Positions 7,761 through 59,529 of a stretch of 64,000 bases of DNA are shown here, in pieces. The notes under the pieces are model-generated. The model was not told the origin of the DNA and did no database searches. It saw only the letters and a list, made by a program, of their open reading frames with translations. Numbering within the stretch: position 1 is the first letter of the stretch; the number at the start of each line of letters is the position of its first letter. This stretch comes from Macrostomum lignano (lineage: Eukaryota), in assembly GCA_002269645.1 (NCBI GenBank), contig NIVC01002423.1:47322-111321 (forward strand), read 5' to 3'. The position numbers and the translations under genes were made by a program.

Positions 7761-7846
7761 CTTCTTCAATAGATCCCCTGTCTACCCCACTCTATCTCCC
7801 CTATCTATCTGTATCCCCTATCTACCCTTCCTCAACCTCCTTGCAG

Positions 7847-8074: not shown

Positions 8075-8089
8075 GTGAGACTGGAATGC

Positions 8090-8270
8090 CGAATCAGGCA
8101 GATCTAGCTGCCATTCCCTAATCAGGCAGATCTAGCTGCCATTCCCTAATCAGGCAGATCTAGCTGCCATTCCCTAATCAGGCAGATCTAGCTGCCATTC
8201 CCTAATCAGGCAGATCTAGCTGCCATTCCCTAATCAGGCAGATCTAACTGCCATTCCCTAATCAGGCAGC
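8090..8270. repeat. 28-bp minisatellite, about 6 copies (intronic)
   Basis: AATCAGGCAGATCTAGCTGCCATTCCCT repeated; each unit holds a GGCAG/CTGCC hairpin. Confidence 0.95.
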
Positions 8271-30390: not shown

Positions 30391-32822
30391 GCGAAAACCC
30401 GTATGGTCAGGCTGACCATAGACTACTGCTATGTAAAATTATAGTGCTGCTTTAACATCGCCAAAACCCGTTACTTGAGAGAGTGTGTTTGGAACACTCT
30501 GTGACCTGCTTTGGGGTTTCAGCCATAGAACCTATCACTGTGGACTGCTTCTGCCCTTCCTTCCTCGTACCTACTAAGTCACTATCCCTAGAAAGATTTT
30601 TCTCCTTTACATTCAATCTAGATTGTTTGCCTCTTCATTTTAAGAAGAATTGTCATATAATTTGCTATTTCGACGGATAAGTAATAATGAGTCTTCATCA
30701 ACTTCTTACAAGCGACGAGTCCAACAGCTCATCGACTGAGTCAGATCAGGACTCAGTTTTTGAAGTAATTGAGGAGCCAACCTTGGAGATGAAGGATGAG
30801 GAAAACGAATGGACAATTGTCAACGACGGAGAAGATGACAGAGCTGGGCAGCTTCCCGAGTTTCTCGGAGTCCACGGTATGAATCCTGGTGTTCAAGCAC
30901 CAGCAAATGAGCCGTTACTCTTTTTCAACTTATTCACGAAGGACATTATTAGTCATTTGAAAGAATTCACCAATGCTCGCGCATGGGAGGAGCTGCGAAT
31001 CTTTGAGAACGAAGAGGATGACCAGCAGCTGCCACCGAGATTGACCGATTGGAGAGACTGTGCAGATGATGAGATAAAAAAGACCATCGCAATAATATTT
31101 TACATGGGAATCGTGCGCAAGCCAGAGATAAAAAACTACTGGGCCACTGGAAAGTTTTATGACAACCAGTTGTTCCTGAGTGAAAACTGCCTGTCTCGAA
31201 ACCGGTTCCAACAAATCTTATCTTTTCTGAGGTTCTACGACTGTCGCGTTGGTGACAATGACGATCCGCTTCGCAAAATCCGCCCGTTCTTGAACTCAGT
31301 AAAGGAAGTTTGTCAGCAGAATTTTCAGCCTGACAGGGACATCGCTGTTGACGAGGAGCTTGTTCAGCACAAAGGACGACTAGCGTTCAAACAGTATATT
31401 CCCAGCAAGCGGGCTAGATATGGAATTAAGGCCTATTGTCTTTGTGACTCCAAGACCGGTTACTTATGGAGCGTCCTCGTTCATTCGACAGCTGAGGAAA
31501 ACAGCAAGTTTGGCAGCGAATTCGTCGACTACAACCTGTCCATCAGCGAGCGAATAGTGGTGGAGCTTCGAAGGACCTGCTAAATCTTGGCTACAGGGTG
31601 TTTGTTGGCAGTTATTTCTCCTCCCGACGACTGGCCGAGTTTCTACTAGCTCACAGTACCTTACTAACAGGCACCGTTCGCTGTGACCGCGGCATTCCAG
31701 TCGAGCTCCGGCAGATGCCAGCAGTGCCTCCATCCCACTGCTACATGCGAAGCGGTGATGTTTTGGCAGTGAAGCTGACAGACAGAAAAGCAAGCGGTAT
31801 TAAGACAGTCTACCTGCTTGACACCTTCGGTACGGCCCAGAGCACTGCGCGACAACGGTACAGACGAGGTGGACAAATGGAGGTTGTTCGAAAGCCGGTG
31901 ACTGTGACGGACTACTCAAAGTCCATGGGTGGTGTCGACCGCCTTGACTCTGCGCTGCAGCCCTACCACCCAAGCAGAAAGATGTACCGCTGGCACCAGA
32001 AGCTCGGAATTCATTTCCTATTGCAGCTGTCGCAAAATGCCTGGATTTTGTTCCGGCACTCCGGCGGCTCACTGACTTTTCTGAAGTTCATGGAACAACT
32101 GATCGTTGCCCTGATAGACAGCTCAGGGCCTGGAAAAAGACGGTGCGTCCACCCATCGCGTCCTGTTGCCGATGCTGTTCACTTGCCCAGTAACACGTCG
32201 CTGCAGAGTCTGCTATCGCAATGGCATCACCAAACGTACCGTCTTCGTCTGTCAGCAGTGCCCGGGTCAGCCCGGCTTGTGCATCCCTGACTGCTTTCGA
32301 GCCTGGCACTCGTAGGCTGAGAGGAGAGTTGTTCGTTTTACTCCTGCCGACTACCTGTTATTGTCTTGCCTCACATTGCATAAAAGTTAGGTAGTGTAAT
32401 AGCAACAGAAGTAAAGCTACATTTACTGGATCTTTTGCAAAATTTATTAGAAAAGAACTCAAAGCAATGCTACATCTGGAAGCTAGAAATTCAAAATATT
32501 GAGACCATTTCAAAGTTTTAACTACTAAGAACTTGAAAAAGTTTCAAAAAGTCGAAAACAGAACGTTATTTACTAGTTCAGCACCCTACTATTCAGGTGC
32601 GATTGAGCAGACAGCTTCGAGCTATGCTCTTTCACCCGTTTAGCAGAGTGAGAAAAGGAATTTTAGTAATTCATGTTTTTTGTGAAAATTTTTTCATGTT
32701 TTTGATATTTTTGACGATATTTTTGAGTTTTTGACATGCTTGAATGCATGTTTTCTCGTTATTATACTTCATATAGACTACTTACAGCCATGGTCAGCCA
32801 AGCTGACCATATGGGTTTTCGC
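30391..32822 (+). mobile_element. piggyBac element with a decayed PGBD4-like transposase (30687 to about 32315)
   Basis: AVDEELV...YIPSKRARYGIK, MGGVDRLD, and a shifted-frame CRVC...CQQC...LC..DCF..WH zinc finger. TTAA|GCGAAAACCCGTATGGTCAG is inverted at 32803-32822. Two frameshifts; DNY reads GSY. True ends are uncertain. Confidence 0.88.
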
Positions 32823-34926: not shown

Positions 34927-35781
34927 ACCAGGAGGTCAGAGTTGCAAGTGGTGTGTGATAAATATAAAAATACATAAATATACATATATCTGTGAGTGAG
35001 GGTGTTGAGGGTGAGGGCATGTGGGGGCATTGGCATGTGGAATTTCACAGAACACAGATTTTCCGGAATTTTTATACTTTTTAAAAAGGGGGGTGCCCTT
35101 GCCCTCATGCCCTCACTCATTTTGAAAATCACTAAAAATAAGTGAAAAATTGACTAAAAACAGGTGAAAATGGTCTGAAAACAGCGATTTTTTGTGATTT
35201 TCAAAAAATTGAAAAAGTGCAATTTTCACGATTCCAACTCTAAAACCATGAGAAAAGTTGGATTCACGGGTCAATTTAATGCAATTTCAGGTATATACAA
35301 TATGAAAGTGTCATCCAATTCAACGATAGGAAATTTTATATATTATAAAATGGCCTTCAGTAAACCAATATTTCTAGGAAATGCCTTAGATATTCAGTCA
35401 GCTATAACAAAACTACCACCCATCTTTTCCAGTGGAAAGTATCCTGGCGAATTTCATATACGAGGGTATTCTTTTGCAAGCCAACAGCTCTGACTCACAA
35501 TGCTGATGATGTATCAGAACCCCTTAACGTGGCACATTTTTGTCTATTTTTAGAATTAGAAAAAAATAAATGAAGCAAACACAAAAGACTCTCAGACACA
35601 CAGAGTGGGTGGCTCCACTGGAGCACAAAGGCAGCCTTTATTTCAAAGAGTTGTTTTCAAGGTATATACTAAGGTAAGTAGCGCGGAGTGAATGTTTGAA
35701 TGATAATTGTCACTTTAAGTAGTAGCATGTCAATTTTTCTGGACGTCCAGAAAAAATTCTGGATATTTGTCTGTCATGTGT

Positions 35782-36254
35782 TTATTCATCAATAGAAGCG
35801 CTTCCCATTTCGCTAGTGGCTGCTTCAATCGTGTCGTTCTCTTCTTCATCAAGCATGCTGTCATCCTCTCCTTCAAAGTGCAGTACGATGTCGAGTTCGA
35901 GGCGGCATGCGAAATTCTCATCTTCTGATGCTCTTTGTTCAATTGCCTTCTTGAACGTCAGAAGGGTCTCAAAGCAATATCCAGAAATTACCAGACTCGG
36001 GTACTTTGTTGTTAGCTTGTAGAATGTAAATAGTCGCTGGGCAAACTTCACATCTATATCTAGCTTTCTCGCAACTCCTTCAATGCTCAGTCCGAGTTTT
36101 TCTTGCAACGCAGCAATTACTTCTGCTTCTTCTTACTGGCAATACAACCCAGCACTTCAAGGTCGGCGATGAAACCCTCCAGTTGATTGAACCGTTGGAT
36201 CATGCGAGTCTCATCATCGCCAATGATAGATGTGCACACCTTTGCGTTGTAGAA
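35782..36254 (-). pseudogene. Exon 2 of an unknown spliced gene whose exon 1 lies at 43587-43296
   Basis: Removing the Chapaev and LINE insertions restores ...IKTR|FYNAKVCTS... across a 74-bp GTAAGT...TAG intron (39774-39701). One frameshift near 36130 leads to ...FTFYKLTTKYPSL... Confidence 0.7.
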
Positions 36255-39200
36255 CACGGTTGGGCTGGAATAAGATTTCGGGGTAAAAAAATGCCCAATA
36301 AAACGACCACTGCAGTGTGATAGAGGAACATCTCAGCTGCTAGGGGAATATTTTCCTAAAATGAAATCGGTTTGTCCTGACCAGTTATGCCTAATTATGT
36401 TAATTAGCTAGCATAATTAATTTATGTACTCGAAATTAGGCGCTTCCTTCGTGTGAAATCGCCTAAAAACTGCTTTTATGAGCTGTGTTCGTATTAAAAT
36501 CTGTAGCTATTTAATATCAATATATATTAGTATTAGTTATAGAAAGTGAGCACTTTGTAGTTCATATTATTAGTACTCAAAAATTATAAGAAAAAAATAG
36601 AAATATCCAGCGTTTCAGAGAAAGGGTCTTTTCAAAACTGAGCAGCAGGTTGGACATTTGGATAGCACCTATTAAAATTTATATCAATAAAATTAAATAT
36701 ATGATTATAATATAACTTATATAGCAATTCATGATCAGTTTATGTTTTAGCATGCAGGTACTGCGAGATACATGTCACAGATGAAGAAGAGAATATTGCT
36801 AATCTGAGCAGAAAAGTCTGGGTCAAAAGTTTTTTTAGATATTGAATATTTCTTTTGAATTACTTCCATTGCCAATAGAATCAATATTCAAACTTTTGGA
36901 TGTTGAACTTTGAGACAGATCCCTTCACAAATAGTCATGGAAGTATTGCTCCTATTATACTGTTTTTCTTCATCCATGTAGTAGTGCTGGTAACAACAGC
37001 ATGCAGCAAAGTAGGCTGCACAACACGACAGTAAATTTAGTCAAATGAAAAGCCATCACCGCATTAAATATGTCACTGCATTAGATATGCCAGCTGTTAT
37101 ACGCCACTGTTGCCTGCAGCAGCCTATTGCCGAACTGTGGGTGATCGGCTGGCAGCCTGTAGCGTTGCCAAGTCCGCTGGAAATCCGAGTGTGCGCTCTC
37201 TACTGCCTGTTCGCTACAAGTTCCAAGTGCACGACCAGTGCGATGGCAGAAGTCGCTCACGTGGCAAAGGAGAACATGCACTTTGGGCGTGACAGTCAAT
37301 CCCAGTGCCAGGTATGCAGCTCCAAAATTTTCGATTCGCTCACCAAAATCCGGGGCCAATTCCTGGCCAAATGCTCCATTAACAACGCTGTTGAAGCAAA
37401 TCAAGCACTGGGCGAAGGGCTGTAGTTCATGAGGAACGTCTTCAAGAAGAACCTCAGCCATCAGCAGCAATTTGCGACAAGCGTTGCCTTCCATTGTGCC
37501 GCCGCGGTACCCCGCTCGCACGATGCCGTGAGATTGTAGCCATGCAAATCCGCGGTCTTCGCCCCAAGCTTCGTTCAAAGAATCAAGCAATTTGTTACTG
37601 ATTCCGAGCAGAAGATGCAGTTCAGGAGGGGGCAGCAGCATCAGCACTTCCTCGTCATCATCACCAGCCAGCAGCGGCAGATTGACACAGTTCATGAACT
37701 GCTTCGCTCTGCTCCAAACTCGTCCAGCAGAATTGAACTCCTGCACTTTCTGCCGAATTCTACCGAGGGTTCGTGGCCTGCCGCTTGTCGTCAGTGGTGC
37801 AGTAGACTCGCAGTACGGACATGGGTGAGCACACGAGTGAGGCTGGAGTCCGCAGAGAATGTTTGCTAGCTTCATGTCTGTGACAGTCACAGCAGACAGC
37901 TCCACCACAGAAACAGCCTGTAGCAGTGTTTTTACATTTTTGTACGTTTCTGAGATGTCGTTGACGATTGCGAGAACTATAATTTTTTTCACTCCGGCGT
38001 CATTGAACTGTGAGTGGCGTCGCACACTTTCGTGAACTGCAGCAGCACCGCCGTGCGCCTGATGGTCAGACGTGGACGCAACGACAGACACGCAAATCTT
38101 AAAAAAACCTCCGCCACCATCAAGCCCCAGCCGGCATTCGAAGTTAGAGGCTCCTCGCTGTTGGACAATAAATTCAATGAGGCGCGAAGCATCAGTGCAG
38201 AGGACAGCAGCACGATCACCAATGGCAGAAGATGACAGCTCGAATTGAAGTGTCTGAAGTTTAAAAAAGTCTTCCAATACACGATTCTGAGTCACTAATG
38301 AATCTTTCAGCCTAGATTCAACTGCTCGCGAAGAGCTCGCACCAGCTCTCAGTACCTGCGCGACCTGCAGCGTCTGATTGTTGCTAAGATTCAGCACACC
38401 TTTCAGTGTCTTCATTGTGCTGATAGAAGTTGCAGGAAAGCTGGTTGCTCCATTGCCCACACTAGCACCAACAGTCACGCGCATTGGGCGACCACCTTCC
38501 ATCCGTGACAAGGAAACACAGCTGGAGCCACTTGCTGCAGCCTTTGTTGATATGCAGCTGCTGGCCAGCATGTCCTGCGTATCAGGACTGACGCCCTGCT
38601 GCAGATTAGTCAGTCGCGTTGCTCTTGAGCAGTTGTGTTTCTTGCCACGGCCAATTTCTGATCGACAAAACGAGCAAATGAACTGTGGTTGTGCTGCATC
38701 AGCTGCCGACAATGGATGTTTTCGAGGTCGTCCTGGACGAGATGCAGCAGCGCCAGTACTGTAAGAGCTGACAGAAGTTGTCAACTTGCTGCTGTTCTTC
38801 GATCTGGCAAGCTCGCACAGTTCGCAAGAGCAATGCGGATTATTTCTTGTGGACGGAGGCAGACTCTGCAGGTCGGCAACCATCTGCTCATAGTTTAGCC
38901 TTGGTGGCAACTCACGAGGCGCTGGACCAGATAGAGATGAAATGATGCGTCGACACCCGTCACACAAGCCGGTCGGCAGAATGTACTGTACAGAGGCGAA
39001 ATTCGGCACCAAATCCTCAGCAGGAAAATTGGCTACCGACCAAATTGAGCGCGAGGCTTTCCGCAAACAGAGCAAACACAGACTCTCTCTGCACTCCTCA
39101 TGTGATTTTTTTGCATTCGGCATATTCTGAAATTCTGAAATTGATCGCTGGCCACCGATGCAAGAGACAAATGTTTTGAATTTGGCCCTGACTTGAGTAT

Positions 39201-39695
39201 TGGTTGTGATATTTATTTGAGTGCTGCTATGAGTTGGCTATGAAAGTAGCAATCAATGTACATCTGACAGTCTGACGCATATGAAATAGTTCATACGTAC
39301 GTTCATTTGCTAATTTCAATATTGAGCAGAGAGAGTGCGTGGGACCTAGAGCACAACAGTTAAAATCGAAGCTTGAGCAGAGCATTGGCTGCTGCATACA
39401 TTCTGATTAGCAACTGCTCATCCAGTATAATAGCAGTTTATATCATAAAAACATAAAAGCAGACCAGGCCATAAAAGCAGTTTTTAGGCGATTTCACACG
39501 AAGGAAGCGCCTAATTTCGAGTACATAAATTAATTATGCTAGCTAATTAACATAATTAGGCATAACTGGTCAGGACAAACCGATTTCATTTTAGGAAAAT
39601 ATTCCCCTAGCAGCTGAGATGTTCCTCTATCACACTGCAGTGGTCGTTTTATTGGGCATTTTTTTACCCCGAAATCTTATTCCAGCCCAACCGTG
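36255..39695 (-). mobile_element. Full-length Chapaev (CMC/Transib-related) DNA transposon
   Basis: 226-bp TIRs (36255-36480 and 39470-39695) starting CACGGTT, an AGAA 4-bp TSD on both sides and one intact transposase ORF. Confidence 0.92.
37081..39123 (-). CDS. Chapaev transposase, 680 aa, intact
   Basis: N-terminal HEECRESLCLLC Chapa motif. GLDGGGG, TDMKLANILCG, PPPELHLLLG and SEQAVESAH give a complete DDE triad. Confidence 0.9.
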   Translation of the reverse strand: MPNAKKSHEECRESLCLLCLRKASRSIWSVANFPAEDLVPNFASVQYILPTGLCDGCRRIISSLSGPAPRELPPRLNYEQMVADLQSLPPSTRNNPHCSCELCELARSKNSSKLTTSVSSYSTGAAASRPGRPRKHPLSAADAAQPQFICSFCRSEIGRGKKHNCSRATRLTNLQQGVSPDTQDMLASSCISTKAAASGSSCVSLSRMEGGRPMRVTVGASVGNGATSFPATSISTMKTLKGVLNLSNNQTLQVAQVLRAGASSSRAVESRLKDSLVTQNRVLEDFFKLQTLQFELSSSAIGDRAAVLCTDASRLIEFIVQQRGASNFECRLGLDGGGGFFKICVSVVASTSDHQAHGGAAAVHESVRRHSQFNDAGVKKIIVLAIVNDISETYKNVKTLLQAVSVVELSAVTVTDMKLANILCGLQPHSCAHPCPYCESTAPLTTSGRPRTLGRIRQKVQEFNSAGRVWSRAKQFMNCVNLPLLAGDDDEEVLMLLPPPELHLLLGISNKLLDSLNEAWGEDRGFAWLQSHGIVRAGYRGGTMEGNACRKLLLMAEVLLEDVPHELQPFAQCLICFNSVVNGAFGQELAPDFGERIENFGAAYLALGLTVTPKVHVLLCHVSDFCHRTGRALGTCSEQAVESAHSDFQRTWQRYRLPADHPQFGNRLLQATVAYNSWHI

Positions 39696-39787
39696 AGAAC
39701 CTATAATGAAAATAGACTCAAGTTATGATATTTGCTTTTATTCAATGAAATTATGGAGAATGAAACTGAAACTTACCGAGTCTTGAT

Positions 39788-42700
39788 TGACTTGACTTAG
39801 CTGCAGGGCTGTCCCGGAGGGGACACAGCGGGAAGGCGCGGGCGCCCATTCCGCTAGTCCCTGAACGGCCGACGCGTCGCTATGGACGGAGGGTTGGCGC
39901 CGCCCAGGGAGGTCCCCCAGTGTCGCCAGCAGCTATGGTGCTCTCTGGAAAGGAGAGTTCAGCCCTGCGGGTGGCCCGAAGGTAGCGCATGAGCTGATTA
40001 AAGTTTTCGGGTTTGCACGCTTCAGTAATAGATGTGTGTGGCCCGAGGTAAGTGAGTCTGGCCCGCGTGAAGGCGGGACAGATGCTGACAAAATGCTCAG
40101 CGGTTTCGTCACCTGAGTTGCAGAAACTACAGGTGGCGTTGGTGGCGTTGCCCTGCAGGTACTGGTGCCTGGAGAAGCAGCCGTGACCAGAGAGGGTCAT
40201 GGTGGCAGCCCGGGTGTCTCTGCGCGAGAGGCGCAAGAGGAGCTTCCGGAGCTGGTGAGAGGGCTGAGGGACAGCGCCTCTGGATTGTCTGCAGTTCGTG
40301 CGGTTCGCCCAAGTCTGCTGAGTCCTGATCCACGCTTTGATGCGCGAGTCGATGACACAGCCAGGAATCGGGACAAGAGGTTCGGGGCCGAGAGAGGAGC
40401 CGGAGGCACCAACTTTTGCAAGGGTGTCAGCCAACTCATTTCCTCGGATCCCCACATGCCCCGAAACCCACTTAAGGGTAATTTTGTTGGCGGAACCCAA
40501 CACGTTGAGAAGTTTGATACAGTCGAGGACTGTAGCAGAGTTGGTGCTGCAGCCACTGATGGCGTGCAAGGCAGCTAGGCTGTCCGAATGGAAAATGATG
40601 TTCTTACCAGTAACGCCAGTGGCGAGAAGCTCTGCAGTGCAGGAGCTGATGGCCAGAACTTCATTTTGGAAAACACTGGAGTTGACCCCAGTGTATTGAG
40701 CGTGGGTAGCGATGACCCTCCCGTTCAGAAAGATTCCAACACCAAAGCCGGTGTTGGCTGACTGCTTAAAACCGTCGGTGTAGCAATGAAGCTCACCAGG
40801 GTTCCATTGGTCATTGATGTTATCGCGCGAGTCGATAGCTACGGAGTAGCGCTGTCTCAGGTTGAGCGTTGAGGCAATGCCATCGGTGAAGACGCGATTG
40901 GCCTGACACTCGTTGAGAAAGTTGAGGCACAGATCGCTATGCGGGACAAGGTTCCGCTTAGCAGGTGCTCTCATGTAAATGAATTTGACGCCGGCATCAA
41001 TTAGACGCCGCGTCGTTCTAGCCGCCTCACCCCTGATGAAGAGGTCAAGAGGCGGAATATTAAGGAAGGCCCCCATGCCAGCAAAGGGCGTGGACCTGGT
41101 GGCGTTGCAGATGAGCCTACACGCTCTGCCTTGGATCGTGTTGAGCAGGTCTGCATGGCTTTTTACCTGGGTAGCGCTAATCCAGACAACAGAGGCGTAC
41201 GTAATGGCAGGTCTAACTACGGAAGTATAGATCCACCAAAGCCGCTTTGGGGATAGACCCCAAGAAGTGCCAAGTGCTCGTCGGAGCTGGGCCAGGATGG
41301 CTGAGGCACGCTTGGCTTTTGCTTTCACGTGGGAGGACCAGTTGAGCCGGTGGTCAAGTATGACCCCGAGGCATCTGGTCTGGTGCGCGAAGGCAATATC
41401 TCTGCCGTAGAGCTGCAGAGGACGTATGTTCCAGCGTAGTCTGCTGGTAAACATAATGGCAATGGTTTTGGGCTCAGAGAGTTCCAGACCATTGTCATTG
41501 GCCCAGGATTCTGCTTTGCGGATAAAGCTCTGCATCAGATCCCTGAGCGTGCTGGGAGACGGTCCTGCCACAATGGCCGTGACGTCATCAGCATACCCGA
41601 CTTTGAAGACGGGGTCGGGTCGGGAGTCACTCAAAAGAGCGTCCATGACCAGGTTCCAGAGCGTCGGGGTGAGGACTCCGCCTTGGGGTCCACCCTTACA
41701 GACTCTGGTGGAGGCAGTTTGCCCAAGAAGTTGGGCAGTGACCGTACGGTTGGAGATCATGTACATGATCCACCGTATGAGGGTAGCATGAGCTTTGCGA
41801 TTTTGAAGGGCCCTCTGAAACGCTTCAAAGATAACGTTGTCGAAGGCGCCAACAATGTCAAGAAAGAGAGCCAGAGCGTAACCGTCACCCAGTACCGCCC
41901 TTTCAATCTTCTCGACAATCGCATGCAGGGCGCTGTCAGTCGACCTCCCGGTATGGAAGGCGTGCTGATTATTGCTGAGGGGCATCGCTGTCAGCTCGCA
42001 GGACAGCAGCCGCCAGAGAATAAGCCTCTCAGTGAGCTTAAGCATTGCTGACGTTAAGCTAATAGGCCGGAAGGCCTTGACGCTTTGGTAGTCACCCTTC
42101 CCAGGTTTGGGAATAAAGACTACCCAAGCTTCAGTCCAGCATTTGGGAACGTATCCCAGCTGGATAGAGGCCCGCATAAGATTGCGGGTGAGTCTCAGGA
42201 ACGAGGGTATCTTGGCTGCTTCACGAAGGAGAACAGGGTAGATACCATCAGGTCCAGGAGATTTGAAGGGTTTGAAGGTTTTGACCGCACGAGCGATTAG
42301 GTCTTCAGTGACAATGCCCGCCGCTAGGGTGGCTCCATCCATCGAATGGTTGGGCTCCGGTCTAGCAGTAGGTACCCTCGGGAAGAATGTGCTGAGCATA
42401 TGCTGTAGCACTTCTTCAGGGTCTTTAGTAAGAGAGCCATCATCTTTTTTGATCATGGCTAATTTGGACATTTTGTCCATTGTAAGGGCCTTGACAAGCC
42501 TAGAAGTAGGTCTGTCTTGATCTAATTCATTGCAGAATTGGCGCCACTTACATTCCTTGGCCTTGCGCACTTCAGATTTGAAGTTGCGGGAGGCTTGCCG
42601 GAAAAGCTCCATGTCCTCCGGGTTTCCGGTCTTCATGGCACGGCGATGAAGGCTTTTGGCCTTCCGCCTGAGTTTCCCCAGTTCCGGGTTCCACCACGGC

Positions 42701-43292
42701 GCCGAGGTCTTGCCTTTGTAGGCGCGAGCAGGACAAGCCGCTACGTAGGCTGCAATAATGCAACCTGTCAGCGTCTCAGCCATATGATCCACATCCTCGC
42801 AGGTCTCAATCGGACGTAAGTCCGTGAGTTCCTGCAGGTGCAGATCAAGGGCAGCCTTGTAGGCCGCCCAATCAGTGTTGCGGATATTGCGCCTCCAAGT
42901 GATCGGAGACTGGGTTTTAGTGTCCGCGATGTTAAAGGCGATAAAGCAGTGGTCAGACCGGGAGGGCTCCTCAGACCAGACTCTCCACTCCTCAACTCTG
43001 TCAAAGAGTCTTGGGGTAACGAGTGTGGCGTCGAGGACCTCGGTCCATCTGCCATTATTAAAGGTAGGAGTGCTGCCGCGGTTGCAGAGCATGAGGTTTG
43101 TGTTAAAGATGAGGGCCAGAAGCTCCTCTCCTCTAGTGTTGGTATCTTTGCTGCCCCAGTGCTTGTGGTGCGCGTTAAGGTCGCCCCCTAAGCACAGCTC
43201 AGCGTTCTGGGACTCGCAGTACTGCGCGAGGCGCAGTAAACTCTCAGGAGCAGGGTCTCTGTCCCCTGGGATATAAACCGAGGCAACAAGAC
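39788..43292 (-). mobile_element. 5'-truncated I-group (Loa/Lian-like) LINE: partial APE, RT, RNase H, CCHC
   Basis: GDLNAHH and SDH (APE); PQGGVLTP and YADD (RT); YTDG...HVGIRGNELAD (RNase H). AAGTC-type tail. 13-bp TSD ACCGAGTCTTGAT at 39775-39787 and 43293-43305. Confidence 0.92.
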
Positions 43293-43743
43293 ACCGAGTC
43301 TTGATAGTTGTTACTTCGTTTGTCACTCCTCTCATTTTTTCGATAAGGCGTCCAATAAATCGGCTTTCTCTAATAGATTTAGAATCGCTCTCTTTGCTCT
43401 TCTCTTCCTTCTTATCCTTCTTGAAGGACTCACATTCAATCTTTCGCAGTTTTTCCAGTAATGAGTTCTGCTCCTCGCTAGACAAGCGACTAACTGCAAC
43501 TGCTGAACTTGATTGGTCTTTTGAGCTAATACTCTTAATCGTGGAAACTATCTTAGATGGAAGCTTTCTATCGCTGGAAGAAGCCATTTGAAATATGTTG
43601 TATAGATAGAATTCTAGACCTAAAGTAAATTTTCTCTTGCTCTTGCTTGCTAAGCTAAATAAAACTAATATAGCGATGGAGGGGAGGGTCGCAGTCAGCC
43701 GATAACAGGTTACAACTAGCAAAAGTGTGTGGGTGTGAGCCAT
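39880..43743 (-). CDS. Chimeric 1287-aa ORF: resident exon fused in frame to the LINE RT-RNase H
   Basis: Uninterrupted frame across the TSD junction EVTTIKTR|CLVASVY. ATGs at 43743 and 43587. Confidence 0.75.
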   Translation of the reverse strand: MAHTHTLLLVVTCYRLTATLPSIAILVLFSLASKSKRKFTLGLEFYLYNIFQMASSSDRKLPSKIVSTIKSISSKDQSSSAVAVSRLSSEEQNSLLEKLRKIECESFKKDKKEEKSKESDSKSIRESRFIGRLIEKMRGVTNEVTTIKTRCLVASVYIPGDRDPAPESLLRLAQYCESQNAELCLGGDLNAHHKHWGSKDTNTRGEELLALIFNTNLMLCNRGSTPTFNNGRWTEVLDATLVTPRLFDRVEEWRVWSEEPSRSDHCFIAFNIADTKTQSPITWRRNIRNTDWAAYKAALDLHLQELTDLRPIETCEDVDHMAETLTGCIIAAYVAACPARAYKGKTSAPWWNPELGKLRRKAKSLHRRAMKTGNPEDMELFRQASRNFKSEVRKAKECKWRQFCNELDQDRPTSRLVKALTMDKMSKLAMIKKDDGSLTKDPEEVLQHMLSTFFPRVPTARPEPNHSMDGATLAAGIVTEDLIARAVKTFKPFKSPGPDGIYPVLLREAAKIPSFLRLTRNLMRASIQLGYVPKCWTEAWVVFIPKPGKGDYQSVKAFRPISLTSAMLKLTERLILWRLLSCELTAMPLSNNQHAFHTGRSTDSALHAIVEKIERAVLGDGYALALFLDIVGAFDNVIFEAFQRALQNRKAHATLIRWIMYMISNRTVTAQLLGQTASTRVCKGGPQGGVLTPTLWNLVMDALLSDSRPDPVFKVGYADDVTAIVAGPSPSTLRDLMQSFIRKAESWANDNGLELSEPKTIAIMFTSRLRWNIRPLQLYGRDIAFAHQTRCLGVILDHRLNWSSHVKAKAKRASAILAQLRRALGTSWGLSPKRLWWIYTSVVRPAITYASVVWISATQVKSHADLLNTIQGRACRLICNATRSTPFAGMGAFLNIPPLDLFIRGEAARTTRRLIDAGVKFIYMRAPAKRNLVPHSDLCLNFLNECQANRVFTDGIASTLNLRQRYSVAIDSRDNINDQWNPGELHCYTDGFKQSANTGFGVGIFLNGRVIATHAQYTGVNSSVFQNEVLAISSCTAELLATGVTGKNIIFHSDSLAALHAISGCSTNSATVLDCIKLLNVLGSANKITLKWVSGHVGIRGNELADTLAKVGASGSSLGPEPLVPIPGCVIDSRIKAWIRTQQTWANRTNCRQSRGAVPQPSHQLRKLLLRLSRRDTRAATMTLSGHGCFSRHQYLQGNATNATCSFCNSGDETAEHFVSICPAFTRARLTYLGPHTSITEACKPENFNQLMRYLRATRRAELSFPESTIAAGDTGGPPWAAPTLRP

Positions 43744-44702: not shown

Positions 44703-46020
44703 ATGCCAACCAAAGCAGATAGGAATTCAACCTCCCCACCATTTCGACCAGAGGCAGACAACATGATTTGGATAGATACGAAAATCTCAAATATAACCGT
44801 AATCGATATTGATAATGCTGACCTATGCCCTGAGTTGATTGAACTGTGTATGACTCATTGTGATTGGATTGTTCAGACAAACAAGGGTCATCACTTTTAC
44901 TTTAACAAGGTAGATGGATTAAAAGTAACGATTCAACAAAGTGTGGGTTTTGATATTCCGGCTTTAGTATTTGCTCCACCAGGTTTCTATTATGTGGATG
45001 GTGAAATGAAGGAATACAAACGTACAAAGTGCGAGGGACAGATGTAATTCTTGATGAGATAAATAGATTAATTAAGCCACAGGATAAAAAAGAAAACCAA
45101 GAACCCGATAAACAGGCACTAAAAAGCACCGTTCCACCCCCCACTTGTGAAGGAGCTTCAAAGTTGTTAAGTATAATACAACACAAAAACCAAGACTATG
45201 GTTCTTGGTACAAGGTAGCACTTATACTCCGCGACATAGACAGTGGTGATGAAATGTACAAAGTATTCACTAATTGGTCAAAAGCAAATTATAATAGGTT
45301 CGATTCCGAGGCATGTGAGAAGCTGTGGAATAGCACCAGTGCCAGCTCTGCTGATGCACAGGACAGACTTACTATCGGTACACTAAAGAAATGGGCAAGT
45401 GAAGAAAACTATAACAAATATAAGGAATGGAAAAGCAAATATGATTATTATGGTAGAATTGAGTATCTTGATGATAATTTCACTGACGTTAACATAACCA
45501 ACTTTGTTTATGAATATAAGAAAAATAATATAATTTACAATAGCGATGGTATTTACTATTTTGATGATGATGAGTGGAGAGAACTAAGTAGTATAAATGA
45601 CATATTTCTTAAAATATCAGACCTTGTTAGCAGTGAGTTAAACCACCGAAAGACTAGACTCGAAATTGCAATTGAGAAGGCGGCTGATGATAAAGAGAAG
45701 TTAAAAGCACTTGAAAAGAAACTACAGAGTACAATGAAGAATATAAATTCAATACAAGGAGCCAACAAGCTCAAACAGGTAACTACTTTGTTCAAAGAGA
45801 GGTTTACTAACAATGAAATTGAATTCGATATGAAATGGAATTTGCTAGGGTTTAACGATGGAGTAAATGATCTCGCTACAGGTGAGTTTCGCGAGTATAG
45901 ATACGACGATTACGTTACTAAATCGGTGGAATATAATTACTCGGATGTACTTGGAGTGAGTGATTACGACTATAGCTTCATTGTTAATCTGCATAACCAA
46001 ATTCATCCCGATCCAGAAAA
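44703..46020 (+). pseudogene. Viral primase-helicase 5' part: PrimPol (bifunctional primase-polymerase), PriCT-2 and D5_N
   Basis: ITVIDID, VQTNKGHHFYF and GFDI..LVFAPPG; DYGSWYKV...WSK...C.KLW...LTIGTLKKWA; LLGFNDGV.DLATGEFR...DDYVTKS. Frameshift near 45030. Confidence 0.82.
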
Positions 46021-46673
46021 CAAGTGTCTATCTGTTTGGGATTCTGTTTGGGATAAGAAGGGCCCTAATAGGGGAAAATAATATTCGGGAAATGCGTTTG
46101 TTTATCGTTTCCAATGCCAACCGTTTCCGTGGATTTAACAGTAGCAGAATTGGGGATGAACTGGTCGCTGTATTTTCAATATTTTTCTTTTCGCGAATTT
46201 TGCTACTCTCTTCTTTAAATACTCATTTGACGTACGAAAATCTTGATGCGTAGTAAATTATACAATTTACTACGTTTATTTTTTGCTACCCTTCTTTTGA
46301 CGATGTCTTTTACGTATGAAAATCTTGTTGCGTAGCAAAATTATGCAATTTACTACGTTTATTTTTTGCTACCCTTCTTTTGACGATGTCTTTTACGTAT
46401 GAATGTTTTTATGCGTAGTTAAATTCAATATTTTGCTACCCTCTACCTTACGTCCCTGCTTGACGTAGGATGATTTCAAAACGTTGTGAAATTCTACAAT
46501 TTACGATGCTCGAATTTACTACACAAGTCTAATCTACATATCTTGTTGAAGTGCTGAAATTCGATGTGCAGTACTTTCTTAATGTTGCAATCGCAGAACT
46601 TTCTTAAAAAAAGCATCAGGAAGCAGTAGACACGAGAGTCAAGTTGGAATTTTATGTATTTTTTATTCACACT

Positions 46674-47560
46674 AGCTAAATTCAATGCGCTGCTTACGAT
46701 GCAGACCTTTTCGGCGTCTGAATTTGTGTGTAGACCAAAAATGAATTTCCTACCTAAGAATTGGGTACACTGGGTGTGTATTTATTTCAGATACATAGTA
46801 AAATCATTTTACTACCATACACGTTGCTACACAAGATGTGTACGAAATTCTGAAGCGTAGCAAAATATCCTATTTCGTCCCTGAGACCTCAGGGAAGTAC
46901 TTTAAGCGGGGCCAGTCGAAGCAGCGCCTGCTGGGCTGATATCCAGTCGATTGAGCTAGTCGCCGGGCAATTTTAATTTTCTTGAATTCACAGACTTTGC
47001 CAAAATTCGAGTTTGACTTGCAGATCCGCGTCAGTTTTTCACAACTGCACATTGGCCGCCAGGCAGTCGGGGTGGGTAACTTATTTCCATAGGAAATTAG
47101 TCACAATAGCTAAATTCAATGCGCTGATTACGATGGAGACCTTTTCGGCGCCTGAAGAGTTTTTAGGCCAAAATTGAATTTCCTAGCTAAGAGTTGGGTA
47201 CACTGGGTGTGTATTTATTTCACATACGTAGCAAAATCATTTTACTACCCATAGAGTTTGCTACATAAGATGTGTATGAAATTCGGAAGGTACCAAAATA
47301 CTCTTCTTCGTCCGTGAGACCTCTGGGAAGTACTTTGACCGGCGCCACTCAAAGTAGAGCCTGCTGGACTGATATCCAGTCGATTGAGTTAGTCGCCGGG
47401 TAATTTTAATTTTCTTGAATTCACAGACTTCGCCAAAATCTGAGTTCGACTTACCAATCCGCGTCAGTTTTTCGCAACTGCACATTGGCCGCCAAGCAGT
47501 CGGGGTGGGTAACTTATTTCCATAGGAAATTATTCCCAGTAGCTAAATTCAATGCGTAGT
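46674..47560. repeat. About 434-bp repeat unit, two tandem copies (left block)
   Basis: Units start AGCTAAATTCAATGCG at 46674, 47108 and 47541, with internal hairpins such as CCCTGAG-AC-CTCAGGG. Confidence 0.9.
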
Positions 47561-48057
47561 GAAGTTCAATATTTTGCAACGTTTGAATTTTGGTACTGAC
47601 TAATTTACATATGTTGTGGACGTGTGGAAATTTCAATGCGTAGTGAAATTCGACATTTTGCGACGTTCAAATTTCGGTACTGTGTAATTTACATATCTTG
47701 TGGACGTGTGGAAATTTCAATGCGTAGTGAAATTCTACAGTTTAGCATGCTCGAATTTACTACACAATTCAAATTTACATATCTTGTTGACGTGCTGAAA
47801 TTCGATGTGCCATACTTTTTTACTGTTCGAATCTCAGAAGTTTCTTAAAAATAGACTGTCACGAAGCAGTAGACACGAGGGTCAAGTTCGATTTACCGGT
47901 TCGTAGTTTTTTCTTTCCATTCTTTTCTTTGAGAACGAAAAGTTGCTGGAATTCTTTTTCTAATGTATTTTTTTCTTTTAAAACAGAAATTAGAACAAAA
48001 CTTGTCACGCAGAGTTGCCCAGAGTGGAGAACTTGTAAGCAAATTAGAAAAATAAAA

Positions 48058-49406
48058 TTAAATCTTTGATGTCGAACTGTCCGAGTCACTGGGGTAAACT
48101 TTTCCGCCCCGAAGCACTCTTCTTACATGCTCTCCTTCTTCCATTACTGAGTTGCTTTTGTTTTCTTTTCCCTTCATGGTGCGAAACTCGCGCCTCCTTT
48201 TTTCCGTTACTTGTGGCACCGAGTCAGAACCAGACCTCTTGCGTATCGTGATCCCCCTAGCAGCGCTTTCTGAAGCGGAGGCGTCGGAGGTGCCGGCAGC
48301 AGAGGCGCCAGCGGAGGCGCCAGCGGAGGCGCCAGCGGAGGTGCGGGCAGCAGAGGCGCCAGCGGAGGCGCCAGCGGAGGCGCCAGCGGAGGCGCCAGCG
48401 GAGGTGCGGGCAGCAGAGGCGCCAGCGGAAGCGCCAGCAGAGGCGCCAGCAGGGGCGCCAGCGGCGATGTCGGCGGGCGTTTTACTGGCACCGGAAGCGG
48501 CGGTGTCCGTAGCAGCCGTGTTACCGCGCCTTGTAGCAGCCCTCGTATTCATTGAGCCTGCTGCTGCTGCTGCTGCTGCTGAGGCAGCGGCGGCACCGGA
48601 AGCGGTGGTTGTTGCAGCAGTGTCGGCGCATAAAGCCGACTCGGCAGCCTGTGTGTAGTGATTGTGGGGGTATATTACAAGTTGAATTTAGGAATATCGT
48701 AAAATGTTTCTATCTTGCAGGGTTCTAATTTTAAAGGATATTGAATTTTGGTACACTATAATTTACATACGTTGCGGACGTGTGGAAATTTCAATACGTA
48801 GTTAAATTTAATATCTTGCGAAATTCGAGTTTCAGTCTCTTACATCGATAGCGCTCTTAGAAGGCACGGCCGGTGTCTCCGCAGTACGACCTCCCGGCGA
48901 AGACGGCGCACCAGAATCGGAAGCGGCGGCGCCCCTAGCAGCCGTCTTGCCGCGCCTTTTATTGGCCTTCGGAATAGTTGAGGCTGCTGCTGCTGCTGCT
49001 GCTGCTGGGGCAGTGCCGGCACCCGAAGCGGTGGTTGTTGCAGCAGTGTCGGCGCATAAAGCCGACTCGGCAGCCTGTGTGTAGTGATTGTGGGGGTATA
49101 TTACAAGTTGAATTTAGGAATATCGTAAAATGTTTCTATCTTGCAGGGTTCTAATTTTAAAGGGTATTGAATTTTGGTACACTATAATTTACATACGTTG
49201 CGGACGTGTGGAAATGTCAATACGTAGTTAAATTTAATATCTTGCGAAATTCGAGTTTCAGTCTCTTACATCGATAGCGCTCTTAGAAGGCACGGCCGGT
49301 GTCTCCGCAGTACGACCTCCCGGGGAAGACGGCGCACCGGAATCGGAAGCGGCGGCGCCCCTAGCAGCCGTCTTGCCGCGCCTTTTATTGGCCTTCGGAA
49401 TAGTTG

Positions 49407-49440
<34 letters not shown>

Positions 49441-52400
49441 GGCAGTGCCGGCACCCGAAGCGGTGGTTGTTGCAGCAGTGTCGGCGCATAAAGCCGACTC
49501 GGCAGCCTGTGTGTAGTGATTGTGGGGGTATATTACAAGTTGAATTTAGGAATATCGTAAAATGTTTCTATCTTGCAGGGTTCTAATTTTAAAGGATATT
49601 GAATTTTGGTACACTATAATTTACATACGTTGCGGACGTGTGGAAATGTCAATACGTAGTTAAATTTAATATCTTGCGAAATTCAAGTTTCAGTCTCTTA
49701 CATCGATAGCGCTCTTAGAAGGCACGGCCGGTGTCTCCGCAGTACGACCTCCCGGCGAAGACGGCGCACCAGAATCGGAAGCGGCGGCGCCCCTAGCAGC
49801 CGTCTTGCCGCGCCTTTTATTGGCCTTCGGAATAGTTGAGGCTGCTGCTGCTGCTGCTGCTGCTGGGGCAGTGCCGGCACCCGAAGCGGTGGTTGTTGCA
49901 GCAGTGTCGGCGCATAAAGCCGACTCGGCAGCCTGTGTGTAGTGATTGTGGGGGTATATTACAAGTTGAATTTAGGAATATCGTAAAATGTTTCTATCTT
50001 GCAGGGTTCTAATTTTAAAGGATATTGAATTTTGGTACACTATAATTTACATACGTTGCGGACGTGTGGAAATGTCAATACGTAGTTAAATTTAATATCT
50101 TGCGAAATTCAAGTTTTAGTCTCTTACATCGATAGCGCTCTTAGAAGGCACGGCCGGTGTCTCCGCAGTACGACCTCCCGGCGAAGACGGCGCACCAGAA
50201 TCGGAAGCGGCGGCGCCCCTAGCAGCCGTCTTGCCGCGCCTTTTATTGGCCTTCGGAATAGTTGAGGCTGCTGCTGCTGCTGCTGCTGCTGGGGCAGTGC
50301 CGGCACCCGAAGCGGTGGTTGTTGCAGCAGTGTCGGCGCATAAAGCCGACTCGGCAGCCTGTGTGTAGTGATTGTGGGGGTATATTACTACGTTGTGAAC
50401 GTGTGGAAATTTGAATACCTAGTGAAATTCAGTATTTTGCGAATTTCGAATTTTAGTCTCTTACCTCGATGGCGCTCTTAGAGCGCACGACAGTTGTCTC
50501 CGGCTCGGCAGCAACTGGGACAGACGATGCAGGCAGCAGCGGTGGCAGCATGCTTTGGCTTTGTCGACGCATCCATTTGTCTTGTCATTGGTCTTTGGAC
50601 CACGCTGTTCTCCGATTCCTCTCCTAGATTGGGCGGAGCGCTTTTACGTCGGCTGAGACCGTTCAACCTGTGGATCAACAGACCTAAGTTTAACTCCCGG
50701 TCAAACACCATTTCGGTGTAAATCGCGTCTCGCTCCGTGATGCCGCCGAAGTTGATCCGCTGCATGCCATAGGTCCGGTGGTCCTTTCCAGCGTTGATAT
50801 AATCAAATAAGCAGCTCTGAAGTTCCTTGATGTTTCCATTCTGGCGGATAGCAAAATTAAAAAGAACCGCCAATAGGTCACATTTATCTAGGCTGTTCAG
50901 GGCGCCAGCCAGAATGGCCAGGTCATCTCGGCCGTTCTGGGTGCTGCTGTCAAACGAGGCATTCAGAGCGGCCAGGGAATCAGCGCCCTGGTCGGCATCC
51001 GGCGCCGTCATGAGCCTGGTGAGGAGGAGCCAGTCCGAGGGCAATGCGGCATCCGCAAAACTAGCCGGTGCCACCACCGGAACACCGAAACTGGCTAGTG
51101 CTGGGAGCTGCCGGTGGACGCTGACGAAAGGCGGCAACGACGAATCCATCTGTGAAAGAGAATGGTAGTTGGTTTTCAAATAAAAAATTTCAAATGAAGT
51201 ATTTGAGAAGTTCGATTAAGTTTATAGTCAAAAGTAAATTTGCAACGTACATGTAACGAACCTACTTCACGGTTAAAGTTAGATTATGTAGTAAAATACT
51301 GTAACTTGTACGTGTCGATTTTAATACTCTTGAATTTACAGCCTATTGGACGTGTTAAACTGTAGGTGAATATTAAATTAACGGAATTTACAGCATTTGG
51401 ATTTCCATACTCTCTGTTTTCACTATGTATATAACGTGTGGAATATTGCTGTAAAATAATAGATTTGGTTAAGGAACCTTCAGCAGTTTTTGGTTTGCCA
51501 CACATAATACGCATTGAATTTTGCCGTAAATGAACAACTAAATATTACAGTAAAAATTACCCCTTCAAGTGGGGCCGCGACGCCAGCCGCGATGGACGCC
51601 AATGGCGACTCCTCATCCGACGACCTGCGTTTGGCAGGGGCTGATCCTGCAGCTGCTGCCGCCGCCTTGGGCTTCTTTAGCGGTTGGAACTGTACCGTTT
51701 TCTGTGGAAATATTATGAGTGACTTAATATATATTTCTTATATATTAAAAAATGCATTAAAAAAAGCACGAAATTTTTAACTTCACTCTTTACTCACAGG
51801 CAACTGCGCTTCTGGAGACGAGTCCGTGCCGTCATCCGCCGACTGCTTCTTCTTGCGCGGCACCGGCGTTTCTGGCAGCTGGTCGACGGGCGGTGCCAGG
51901 CGACTGGGCTTCGCCTTGTTGTAGTGTTGGAACTGGCGCTTGATGAGCGCAGCCGTGGACTCCGCTAGCTCGACGACGGCTGTTTTACCGATCCGCTCCA
52001 GCTCCACCTTCTCTTCCTCGGTTATCGGCTGATACCAAGCGTCCTTTGGCGGAGCGGTCTCGCCTTTCCAAATGCTGCCATTTGCCAAGCAGTGTCTTTT
52101 GACGTTATTGGTTCGAAAACACGGACAGAGGTTCTGAGCATCGGCTCTCACGGCGCCTAGCTCGACCCACTGGGCGAATAGCCCATTGGGACACGTCAGA
52201 GACGGGGCCTCTTGGAAGGTCAGCCGAACCTTTCGAAGCATGGGGCCTTTATGGATCAAAGCCACTTTGGAATCTACCTTACGAGGCCTGTACTTCTTCC
52301 TTCGGCCTGCAGGCCCGTCAACGGGTTCTACGGCAACGCCTTCTTCAGCATCATCTTCGTCGGCAGCTTCCTCGTTGGCAGAGTCTTCGTCCAACTCAAC

Positions 52401-59525: not shown

Positions 59526-59529
59526 CATT

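What the first reader, a model, noticed from the sequence alone, without database searches (positions are those of the whole stretch)
39880..43743. In-frame fusion of a resident exon to an endonuclease-truncated RT-RNase H
A 5'-truncated LINE inserted at a splice donor, changing GTAAGT to the weak GTGTCT and staying in frame. The resident promoter and ATG (43587) could now produce a protein of about 1235 aa: about 98 Ser/Lys/Glu-rich residues, an APE lacking its N-terminal catalytic motifs, then intact YADD RT, RNase H and CCHC. This is a ready-made route to a re-promotered or domesticated reverse transcriptase, possibly of viral-gene origin. In-frame joining has a one-in-three chance, so selection is not shown.
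Basis: partly seen in the sequence, partly recalled or inferred. Interest (0 to 1): 0.7.

Follow-up and report, generated by a model that had tools for sequence, protein, structure and literature searches.

The report
Truncated LINE inserted in decaying gene
A front-truncated LINE retrotransposon recently landed exactly on the first splice donor of a small gene of the flatworm Macrostomum lignano and happens to read in frame with it. That gene copy carries two more fresh lesions and nothing shows the fusion is used, so this is an ordinary transposon insertion.

Summary
A 3,505-bp, 5'-truncated LINE (43292..39788, minus strand) lies between perfect 13-bp target-site duplications. It was inserted at the exon 1 / intron 1 boundary of a two-exon gene. 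The upstream donor now reads GTGTCT, and the original GTAAGT survives in the downstream duplication. The reading frame runs from ATG 43587 through 98 resident codons into 1,137 LINE codons: an endonuclease lacking its first ~105 residues, then YADD reverse transcriptase, RNase H and CCHC.

New findings:
- The host is Macrostomum lignano or a very close relative.
- The resident gene is real. It belongs to a ~250-aa flatworm family with the intron at the same position and long-term purifying selection.
- No viral origin was found for the resident gene.
- This gene copy has two further lesions: a 3.4-kb DNA transposon 5 nt into exon 2, and a 1-nt frameshift.
- The LINE copy carries changes at three invariant RNase H positions. 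Two are shown to be private to this copy.

No transcript, conservation or selection evidence could be obtained. The best reading is an incidental in-frame insertion (1-in-3 chance) into a dispensable paralog in a repeat-rich, partly duplicated genome. Domestication is not excluded but is unsupported.

The parts
43588..43743 (-). In-frame upstream extension of the ORF (52 codons). Probably 5' UTR/promoter-proximal sequence, not coding.
   Evidence: Similarity to the paralog (L006) and to P0058 starts at ATG 43587. A TATA-like GCTATATTAG lies about 90 nt upstream of that ATG. Calling it a promoter element is inference.
43295..43587 (-). Exon 1 coding part of the resident gene (293 nt, 97 codons + 2 nt; MASSSDRK...TTIKTR).
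   Evidence: 66% identical to aa 1-97 of M. lignano BOX15_Mlig020038g4 (P0058/P0067), ending exactly at the junction. Several ORF-call fragments of the family end in ..KTR.
43293..43305 (-). 5' copy of the 13-bp target-site duplication ATCAAGACTCGGT. Its last GT is the former donor GT, now followed by GTCT.
39788..43292 (-). 5'-truncated LINE body (3,505 bp): ORF2 from about codon 105 to the stop at 39882..39880, plus a 92-nt 3' UTR. It lacks the 5' UTR, ORF1 and the N-terminal endonuclease.
   Evidence: Alignment A1. The full-length relative L007 has ORF1 (525 aa) plus ORF2 (1232 aa). Both share the 3' end ...CCCTGCAGCTAAGTCAA. Other M. lignano copies carry the missing N-terminus.
42940..43290 (-). 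C-terminal remnant of the AP-type endonuclease (aa 152-268).
   Evidence: Pfam Exo_endo_phos_2. Exo_endo_phos matches profile positions 124-225/225 only. TRAS1 EN matches at residues 147-242/245 only.
41389..42114 (-). Reverse transcriptase domain, with YADD at 41584..41595.
   Evidence: Pfam RVT_1, E 2.4e-26. Matches to R2 and LINE-1 ORF2p structures. Coordinates.
40405..40791 (-). RNase H domain. The catalytic D/E/D/D columns are kept, but it has F992 (TDGS->TDGF), L1056 (DSQ->DSL) and S1094 (PGH->SGH).
   Evidence: Pfam RNase_H. Invariant columns and deviations. Other M. lignano copies have S and Q at the first two positions.
40078..40131 (-). C-terminal CCHC zinc-knuckle motif (CSFCNSGDETAEHFVSIC).
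39775..39787 (-). 3' copy of the 13-bp target-site duplication. It keeps the original donor context ACTCG|GTAAGT.
   Evidence: The paralog has ATCAAAACTCG|GTAAGT at the same codon.
39701..39776 (-). Resident intron 1 (76 nt, GTAAGT...TATAG). It contains AATAAA at 39742.
   Evidence: The paralog has a 72-nt intron at the identical position.
36255..39695 (-). Second insertion: a 3,441-bp DNA transposon with about 230-bp terminal inverted repeats and a 680-aa ORF (37081..39123), 5 nt into exon 2. Its 4-bp TSD TTCT lies at 39699..39696 and 36254..36251.
35782..36254 (-). Rest of exon 2 of the resident gene, with a 1-nt deletion in a Gln codon (residual AA at 36128..36127). This gives a premature TAA at 36119..36117. 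The old frame stays open to the natural TAA at 35784..35782, which overlaps AATAAA.

Best explanation
This is a young, incidental insertion of a 5'-truncated LINE. The LINE is an APE-type non-LTR retrotransposon with RNase H and a C-terminal CCHC. It inserted into the sense strand of a small two-exon Macrostomum lignano gene by target-primed reverse transcription, which left a 13-bp target-site duplication spanning the last 11 nt of exon 1 and the GT of the donor. Reverse transcription or 5' joining stopped about 105 codons into ORF2. The copy therefore lacks the 5' UTR, ORF1 and the metal-binding N-terminal part of the endonuclease.

The truncation point falls in phase with exon 1, so one 1235-codon frame runs from the resident ATG to the LINE stop. 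This gene copy is a dispensable, decaying paralog or duplicate: a DNA transposon sits 5 nt into exon 2 and a 1-nt deletion shifts the frame further on.

Shown: the anatomy, the TSDs, the truncation, the reality and intron of the host gene, the extra lesions, and the multicopy nature of both transposons.

Inferred: that the in-frame join is chance, that no functional fusion protein is made or selected, and that genome redundancy makes the loss tolerable.
For: TSD and junction sequences.

Truncation of the LINE:
- It was measured against full-length relatives and TRAS1 EN.
- The full-length relative has ORF1 + ORF2.
- Other M. lignano copies of the family are 87-99% identical and carry the N-terminus missing here.

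The host gene is real:
- Relatives of 239-254 aa span the exon 1/exon 2 join.
- The paralog locus has its only intron at the same codon, with GTAAGT.
- pN is 0.21 against pS 0.70 versus the paralog.

Extra lesions:
- The TIR element has five other copies at 98.3-98.5% identity and 4-bp TSDs.
- The frameshift is seen by comparison with P0058 and L006.

Three deviations from invariant columns lie in RNase H. Two of them are absent from other M. lignano copies.

Against: - Nothing tested here rules out transcription from the resident promoter. Exon 1, its ATG and a TATA-like element are intact.
- The LINE sense strand has no AATAAA/ATTAAA that would end a transcript early.
- The two extra lesions lie downstream of the LINE stop codon, so they do not damage the fusion ORF. 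They could simply follow from the LINE having already killed the gene.
- The 1-nt frameshift could be an assembly error.
- The order of the three events is unknown.
- The third RNase H change (S1094) could be a family trait, because no other M. lignano copy covers that position.
Confidence: 0.85

Rival explanations
1. The fusion is a working chimeric gene. The resident promoter drives a 1235-aa protein: a coiled-coil N-terminus, then an endonuclease-dead RT-RNase H. That protein is either on its way to domestication or mobilises its own mRNA without endonuclease, carrying exon 1 along.
For: - One open frame runs from ATG 43587 to 39880.
- The RT YADD motif, the RNase H catalytic columns and CCHC are kept.
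- The donor is weakened to GTGTCT, so read-through is plausible (donor strength is judged from general knowledge of U1 pairing).
- The LINE sense strand has no poly(A) signal.
- The LINE 3' end needed for priming is present.
Against: - In-frame joining is expected in 1 of 3 insertions.
- The insertion is too young to show selection: perfect TSD and about 1% private amino-acid changes.
- Two private changes hit invariant RNase H positions.
- No such protein is on record. This is weak evidence, because repeat-overlapping transcripts were excluded from the GenBank annotation and this assembly seems not to be in the collection.
- The retained donor and intron lie about 105 nt downstream of the stop, a layout that triggers nonsense-mediated decay in many animals (general knowledge).
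Confidence: 0.08
2. The 98 N-terminal residues are not a host exon. They would be part of the LINE itself (5' UTR/ORF1 remnant) or of a viral or mobile element that also holds the neighbouring primase-like gene.
For: - A Prim-Pol/PriCT_2/D5_N gene fragment lies 1.1 kb upstream on the other strand.
- Both regions are AT-rich.
- UniRef names two family members 'Endonuclease-reverse transcriptase'.
Against: - The TSD places the LINE boundary at 43292.
- ORF1 of the full-length relative has no similarity to the resident protein.
- The family has a conserved spliceosomal intron, and its similarity is confined to the CDS.
- The paralog locus has no primase-like sequence upstream and no adjacent ORF2.
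- No significant viral or PDB fold match was found.
- UniRef names for this family are mutually inconsistent.
Confidence: 0.04
3. The arrangement is an assembly artefact: a chimeric join of a LINE copy and a gene.
For: The genome is highly repetitive and hard to assemble. The window's own ORFs are not on record in the annotated Mlig_3_7 assembly.
Against: A perfect 13-bp duplication of the exon/donor sequence flanks the LINE on both sides. Joining the flanks restores an exon-intron junction like that of the paralog. A mis-join would not create a TSD.
Confidence: 0.02

Closest known systems
5'-truncated LINE insertions into genes by target-primed reverse transcription (for example human LINE-1 insertions in exons or at splice sites; own knowledge)
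   Same: Sense-oriented, 5'-truncated copy flanked by a perfect 13-bp target-site duplication. It disrupts a splice donor, and the LINE 3' end is intact.
   Different: The tail is not poly(A). It ends in ...CTAAGTCAAGTCA, which shares TCAAG with the target ATCAAG. This suggests priming by microhomology (inference). The host is a flatworm.
RNase H-bearing APE-type LINE clades (I, Nimb, Ingi, LOA, Tad1 group; own knowledge). By sequence, the nearest solved parts are the TRAS1 endonuclease and the R2 / LINE-1 ORF2p RTs.
   Same: Domain order is APE, RT (YADD), RNase H, then C-terminal CCHC. A separate ORF1 lies upstream in the full-length relative.
   Different: The exact clade was not determined. 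ORF1 of the relative has no Pfam hit on record and no evident zinc knuckles. This copy lacks ORF1 and the N-terminal endonuclease.
Host-transposon fusion genes and domesticated reverse transcriptases (transposase-capture fusions, rvt genes, RTL/PEG genes; own knowledge)
   Same: A host exon and promoter are joined in frame to a transposon-derived catalytic domain.
   Different: Known cases are conserved across species, under purifying selection and transcribed. None of this is shown here. The copy is young, its host gene is decaying, and its RNase H carries changes at invariant sites.
Endonuclease-independent LINE retrotransposition and 5' transduction (described for LINE-1; own knowledge)
   Same: An RT-competent, endonuclease-defective ORF2 with an intact LINE 3' end, transcribed from an upstream foreign promoter, is the substrate such pathways use.
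   Different: There is no ORF1 in cis, no evidence of transcription, and no daughter copies carrying exon 1. No second match to exon 1 was found in the window or the fetched loci.

Membership tests
APE-type LINE (non-LTR retrotransposon), RNase H-bearing branch | Reverse transcriptase with the Y/F-x-D-D motif | tested here: met
   Pfam RVT_1 E 2.4e-26; YADD at aa 717-720; matches to R2 and LINE-1 ORF2p RT structures
APE-type LINE (non-LTR retrotransposon), RNase H-bearing branch | Complete AP-like endonuclease N-terminal to the RT | tested here: not met
   Only the C-terminal part is present in this copy (Exo_endo_phos profile 124-225/225; TRAS1 EN 147-242/245). Relatives and other M. lignano copies have the full domain. 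The family has the feature; this copy is truncated.
APE-type LINE (non-LTR retrotransposon), RNase H-bearing branch | RNase H domain after the RT, with its catalytic acidic residues | tested here: met
   Pfam RNase_H E 4e-8; D990, E1028, D1054 and D1106 are invariant columns. Neighbouring invariant residues are changed, so activity is uncertain.
APE-type LINE (non-LTR retrotransposon), RNase H-bearing branch | Target-site duplication, variable 5' truncation and a conserved 3' end | tested here: met
   13/13 TSD. 5' truncation relative to L007 and other copies. 3' end shared with L007.
APE-type LINE (non-LTR retrotransposon), RNase H-bearing branch | Assignment to a named clade (I, Nimb, Ingi, LOA, Tad1...) by RT phylogeny | not tested
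   No reference set of clade RTs was available in these tools.
Domesticated RT / functional host-TE fusion gene | Transcript and protein spanning the junction | not testable with these tools
   No read-level RNA data. Exact-protein look-ups of the 1287-aa and 1235-aa products found nothing. The annotation excluded repeat-overlapping transcripts.
Domesticated RT / functional host-TE fusion gene | Orthologous conservation or fixation of the insertion | not testable with these tools
   The locus could not be found in another assembly.
Domesticated RT / functional host-TE fusion gene | Purifying selection on the TE-derived part after insertion | tested here: inconclusive
   About 5 private amino-acid changes in about 517 comparable positions. 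Two of them are at positions invariant across the clade. This leans neutral, but the numbers are too small and no DNA of sister copies was available.
Resident gene family (M. lignano BOX15_Mlig020038g4-like, ~250 aa, function unknown) | Full-length similarity and shared intron position | tested here: met
   E 1.5e-41 and 66% identity over aa 1-141. The C-terminal 121 aa match at 60% in the shifted frame. The intron is at the identical codon. Alignment A2.
Resident gene family (M. lignano BOX15_Mlig020038g4-like, ~250 aa, function unknown) | Intact reading frame | tested here: not met
   LINE at the donor, DNA transposon in exon 2, and a 1-nt deletion with premature TAA at 36119..36117.
Cut-and-paste DNA transposon (second insertion; CMC/Chapaev-like suggested from memory) | Terminal inverted repeats, fixed-length TSD, multiple copies with the same ends | tested here: met
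   231-nt arms, 99% complementary. Six copies have identical CACGGTTGGGCTGG tips. Five of the six have perfect 4-bp TSDs; L004 matches at 3 of 4.
Cut-and-paste DNA transposon (second insertion; CMC/Chapaev-like suggested from memory) | Recognisable DDE transposase of a named superfamily | tested here: not met
   The 680-aa protein has no Pfam hit and no PDB sequence match. The superfamily is left open.

The most novel reading that the evidence does not exclude
The resident promoter transcribes through the weakened donor. The worm would then make a 1235-aa coiled-coil / endonuclease-dead RT-RNase H protein. This would be a caught-in-the-act first step of reverse-transcriptase capture by a host gene, or a source of endonuclease-independent retrotransposition that carries exon 1 as a 5' transduction.
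Probability: 0.05. Interest if true: 0.5.

Novelty: new member of a known kind. Interest (0 to 1): 0.2.

Why it matters
It matters little beyond annotation. It is a clean, base-resolved example of how a 5'-truncated LINE can create an in-frame host-RT reading frame by chance. It also shows how one small gene copy in a repeat-rich, partly duplicated flatworm genome collects three independent lesions within about 8 kb. The locus warns gene predictors and readers that long chimeric ORFs of this kind arise easily in M. lignano: several UniRef models of this species are LINE-host chimeras. If the fusion were expressed, it would be a convenient natural case for studying the earliest stage of RT capture. 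There is no evidence for that.

Tried and rejected
1. A word-index protein search with the reconstructed resident protein found nothing. This was a false negative. The exhaustive HMMER search found nine relatives, including a 66%-identical M. lignano protein that is in the same collection.
2. Pfam gave no family for the resident protein or its relatives.
3. A structure prediction of the resident protein had usable confidence (pLDDT 74; C-terminal helical domain >90). It gave no PDB or viral fold match better than E 0.3, only ~40-residue helix-turn-helix-like local hits.
4. I tried to find this locus, an empty site or an intact allele elsewhere. Exact look-ups covered the 1287-aa and 1235-aa fusion products, the window's 680-aa transposase, a neighbouring 229-aa ORF and ten guessed intact or unspliced products. 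All were negative.
5. The five M. lignano loci fetched through the transposase share only the transposon with the window.
6. I considered that the resident exon is LINE ORF1 or part of a primase-bearing element, and rejected it.
7. I considered an intron instead of a frameshift at 36128. I rejected it because the paralog gene has a single intron and the homology is continuous across the site.
8. dN/dS of the LINE copy against sister copies could not be computed, because only protein fragments of other copies were available.


Full report
**What is in the sequence.** The minus strand carries one open frame from 43743 to 39880, 1287 codons. Pfam places three domains in it:
- an endonuclease/exonuclease/phosphatase remnant at aa 152-268;
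- a reverse transcriptase at aa 544-785;
- an RNase H at aa 985-1113.

The general endonuclease model matches only its last 100 positions (124-225 of 225). The silkworm TRAS1 endonuclease structure matches only at residues 147-242 of 245. YADD lies at 41584..41595 and a CX2CX9HX4C knuckle at 40078..40131.

**The insertion and its borders.**
- The 5' border reads ...ACTATCAAGACTCGGT|GTCTTGTTGCC.
- The 3' border reads ...GCTAAGTCAAGTCA|ATCAAGACTCGGTAAGTTTCAG.
- The 13-nt ATCAAGACTCGGT is present twice, 13/13 identical, at 43305..43293 and 39787..39775.
- It brackets a 3,505-bp body, 43292..39788.

Joining the flanks in a script restores exon ...ACTCG|GTAAGT, followed by a 76-nt intron ending TATAG. 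So the LINE landed on a splice donor. The upstream copy of the donor now reads GTGTCT, and the downstream copy keeps GTAAGT. From general knowledge of U1 pairing, GTGTCT loses the +4 and +5 matches and is a poor donor.

**How much of the LINE is missing.**
- Protein relatives of 1232-1235 aa (57% identity) start with M..CLQINLHHC...LVQEPW. They align with the window copy only from LVASVYIPGD onward. About 100-105 N-terminal residues are therefore gone, including the conserved Asn and Glu of the QINL and QEPW motifs. From knowledge of APE-type endonucleases, these bind the metal.
- A full-length relative on a 6.5-kb contig has a 525-aa ORF1 followed by ORF2. The copy here thus lacks roughly 2.5 kb: 5' UTR, ORF1 and the start of ORF2.
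- The two elements share the 3' end ...CCCTGCAGCTAAGTCAA.
- The tail shares TCAAG with the target ATCAAG. This fits priming by microhomology, which is an inference.

**The host.** Fragments of the same LINE family at 87-99% identity sit inside chimeric UniRef gene models of Macrostomum lignano. These also show the N-terminal endonuclease part that is missing here. The neighbouring transposon is 98.3-98.5% identical to five copies in the M. lignano assembly GCA_002269645.1. The window is therefore M. lignano or a very close relative. Its exact ORFs are not on record, so it probably comes from another assembly or line.

**The resident gene is real.** The first word-index search found nothing. 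The exhaustive HMMER search found nine relatives.
- The best relative is M. lignano BOX15_Mlig020038g4 (254 aa). It is 66% identical over residues 1-141 and so spans the reconstructed exon 1/exon 2 join.
- Its genomic locus has a single 72-nt intron at the very same codon: ATCAAAACTCG|GTAAGT ... TTTTAG|GTTCGACAACGC.
- Similarity between the two loci begins at the ATG (43589..43587).
- Several short family members in the library end in ..KTR. This is what an ORF caller yields when it reads into the GTAA of this donor.
- Against the paralog, pN is 0.21 and pS is 0.70 (saturated), so the family has long been under purifying selection.
- The family has no Pfam domain.
- A model of usable confidence (pLDDT 74) shows long helices and a compact helical C-terminal domain. 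It has no significant match to solved or viral structures.
- UniRef names for the family members contradict each other and carry no information.

**This gene copy is otherwise broken.**
- Five nucleotides after the acceptor, exon 2 is interrupted by a 3,441-bp element (36255..39695). It has ~230-bp near-perfect inverted ends, a 680-aa ORF and a 4-bp duplication, TTCT.
- Five other copies of that element have the same ends. Four have perfect 4-bp duplications and the fifth matches at 3 of 4.
- After this element the exon resumes.
- At 36128 a Gln codon has lost one base relative to the paralog (AAG AAG AA- GCA GAA GTA). This gives TAA at 36119..36117.
- The old frame stays open for 113 more codons, to the natural TAA at 35784..35782 that overlaps AATAAA.
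- All three lesions look recent, and their order cannot be told. The indel could be an assembly error.

**State of the LINE copy.** Over about 517 residues covered by other M. lignano copies, the window copy has about five private changes. Two of them, TDGS to TDGF (aa 992) and DSQ to DSL (aa 1056), hit columns that are invariant in all seven relatives down to 24% identity. A third such deviation, PGH to SGH (aa 1094), has no sister copy for comparison. All three lie in RNase H, next to catalytic residues. This leans towards relaxed constraint, but the numbers are small.

**Could the fusion be made?**
- The frame is open.
- Of the two other phases, the one tested stops after 15 codons.
- The LINE sense strand has no AATAAA or ATTAAA.
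- A TATA-like element sits about 90 nt upstream of the ATG, as in the paralog.
- Read-through is therefore possible.
- Such a transcript would still meet the intact donor and intron about 105 nt after the LINE stop, and then the second transposon. In many animals this layout marks a message for decay (general knowledge).
- No protein of this sequence is on record. The GenBank annotation of this species deliberately dropped transcripts overlapping repeats (PMC5730564), so this absence says little.

**Comparison with known things.** This is a textbook 5'-truncated LINE insertion with a target-site duplication. Its domain order places it among the RNase H-bearing APE-type LINEs; the exact clade was not determined. 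It resembles the starting material of host-transposon fusion genes and of endonuclease-independent retrotransposition. It meets none of the criteria that define a domesticated gene (expression, conservation, constraint), and none of these could be tested or met here.

**The viral-origin idea.** It probably stems from the frameshifted Prim-Pol/PriCT_2/D5_N gene fragment 1.1 kb upstream on the other strand. The paralog of the resident gene has no such neighbour, and the family carries a spliceosomal intron.

**Verdict.** In a genome that is more than half repeats, with 180 Mb of near-identical duplicated blocks, an in-frame LINE hit on a redundant small gene is expected now and then. Interest is low.

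Noticed in passing
window 36255..39695: A 3,441-bp DNA transposon with ~230-bp near-perfect terminal inverted repeats (tips CACGGTTGGGCTGG), 4-bp target duplications and a 680-aa ORF (37081..39123, minus strand). The ORF is 99% identical to M. lignano BOX15_Mlig012838g9. There are at least five more copies in Mlig_3_7. The protein has no Pfam or PDB match, so the superfamily is open (CMC/Chapaev-like by TSD length and tips, from memory).
   Followed up: partly
window 44703..46081 (+): Two overlapping ORFs with Prim-Pol (weak), PriCT_2 and D5_N domains: a frameshifted primase-helicase-like gene of virus or mobile-element type, with no helicase part seen. It is divergent from the resident gene and AT-rich (36% GC). 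It is not found next to the paralog in L006.
   Followed up: partly
window 46226..47802 and 48274..50000: Tandem arrays. Units of 83/84 bp and 433 bp lie directly after the primase-like fragment. GC-rich units of 12/63/426 bp follow and give Ala/Ser/Gly-rich ORFs on both strands.
   Followed up: no
window ~22000..24000: A degenerate purine-rich (GA) low-complexity tract with extreme strand skew (GC skew 0.66, AT skew 0.46). The long ORFs listed there are artefacts of composition.
   Followed up: partly
window 30687..32290 (+): A piggyBac-like transposase (DDE_Tnp_1_7) split over two ORFs.
   Followed up: no
window 58566..61123 (-): A second, unrelated reverse-transcriptase element (31% identity to the LINE RT over 205 aa). 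A 65%-similar stretch lies 4.6 kb downstream of the paralog in L006.
   Followed up: no
window 7193..8107 (+): An ORF with a Formin Homology 2 domain segment, probably an exon of a host formin gene.
   Followed up: no
proteins P0006, P0008, P0009, P0013 (UniRef, M. lignano): Published gene models of this species stitch ORF1 and ORF2 pieces of this LINE family to kinase, GPCR or piggyBac parts. LINE-host chimeric ORFs are thus common annotation products in this genome.
   Followed up: partly
tool behaviour, vs 27/29: The word-index protein search returned no hit for the resident protein, although a 66%-identical protein with long shared words is in the same collection. Negatives from that tool for short, low-complexity queries should not be trusted.
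   Followed up: yes
window 35781..35786 and L006 ~1675: The natural stop of the resident gene overlaps an AATAAA signal. The paralog has a CTATAAAAA box ~95 nt upstream of its ATG, and the window copy has GCTATATTAG ~90 nt upstream.
   Followed up: no
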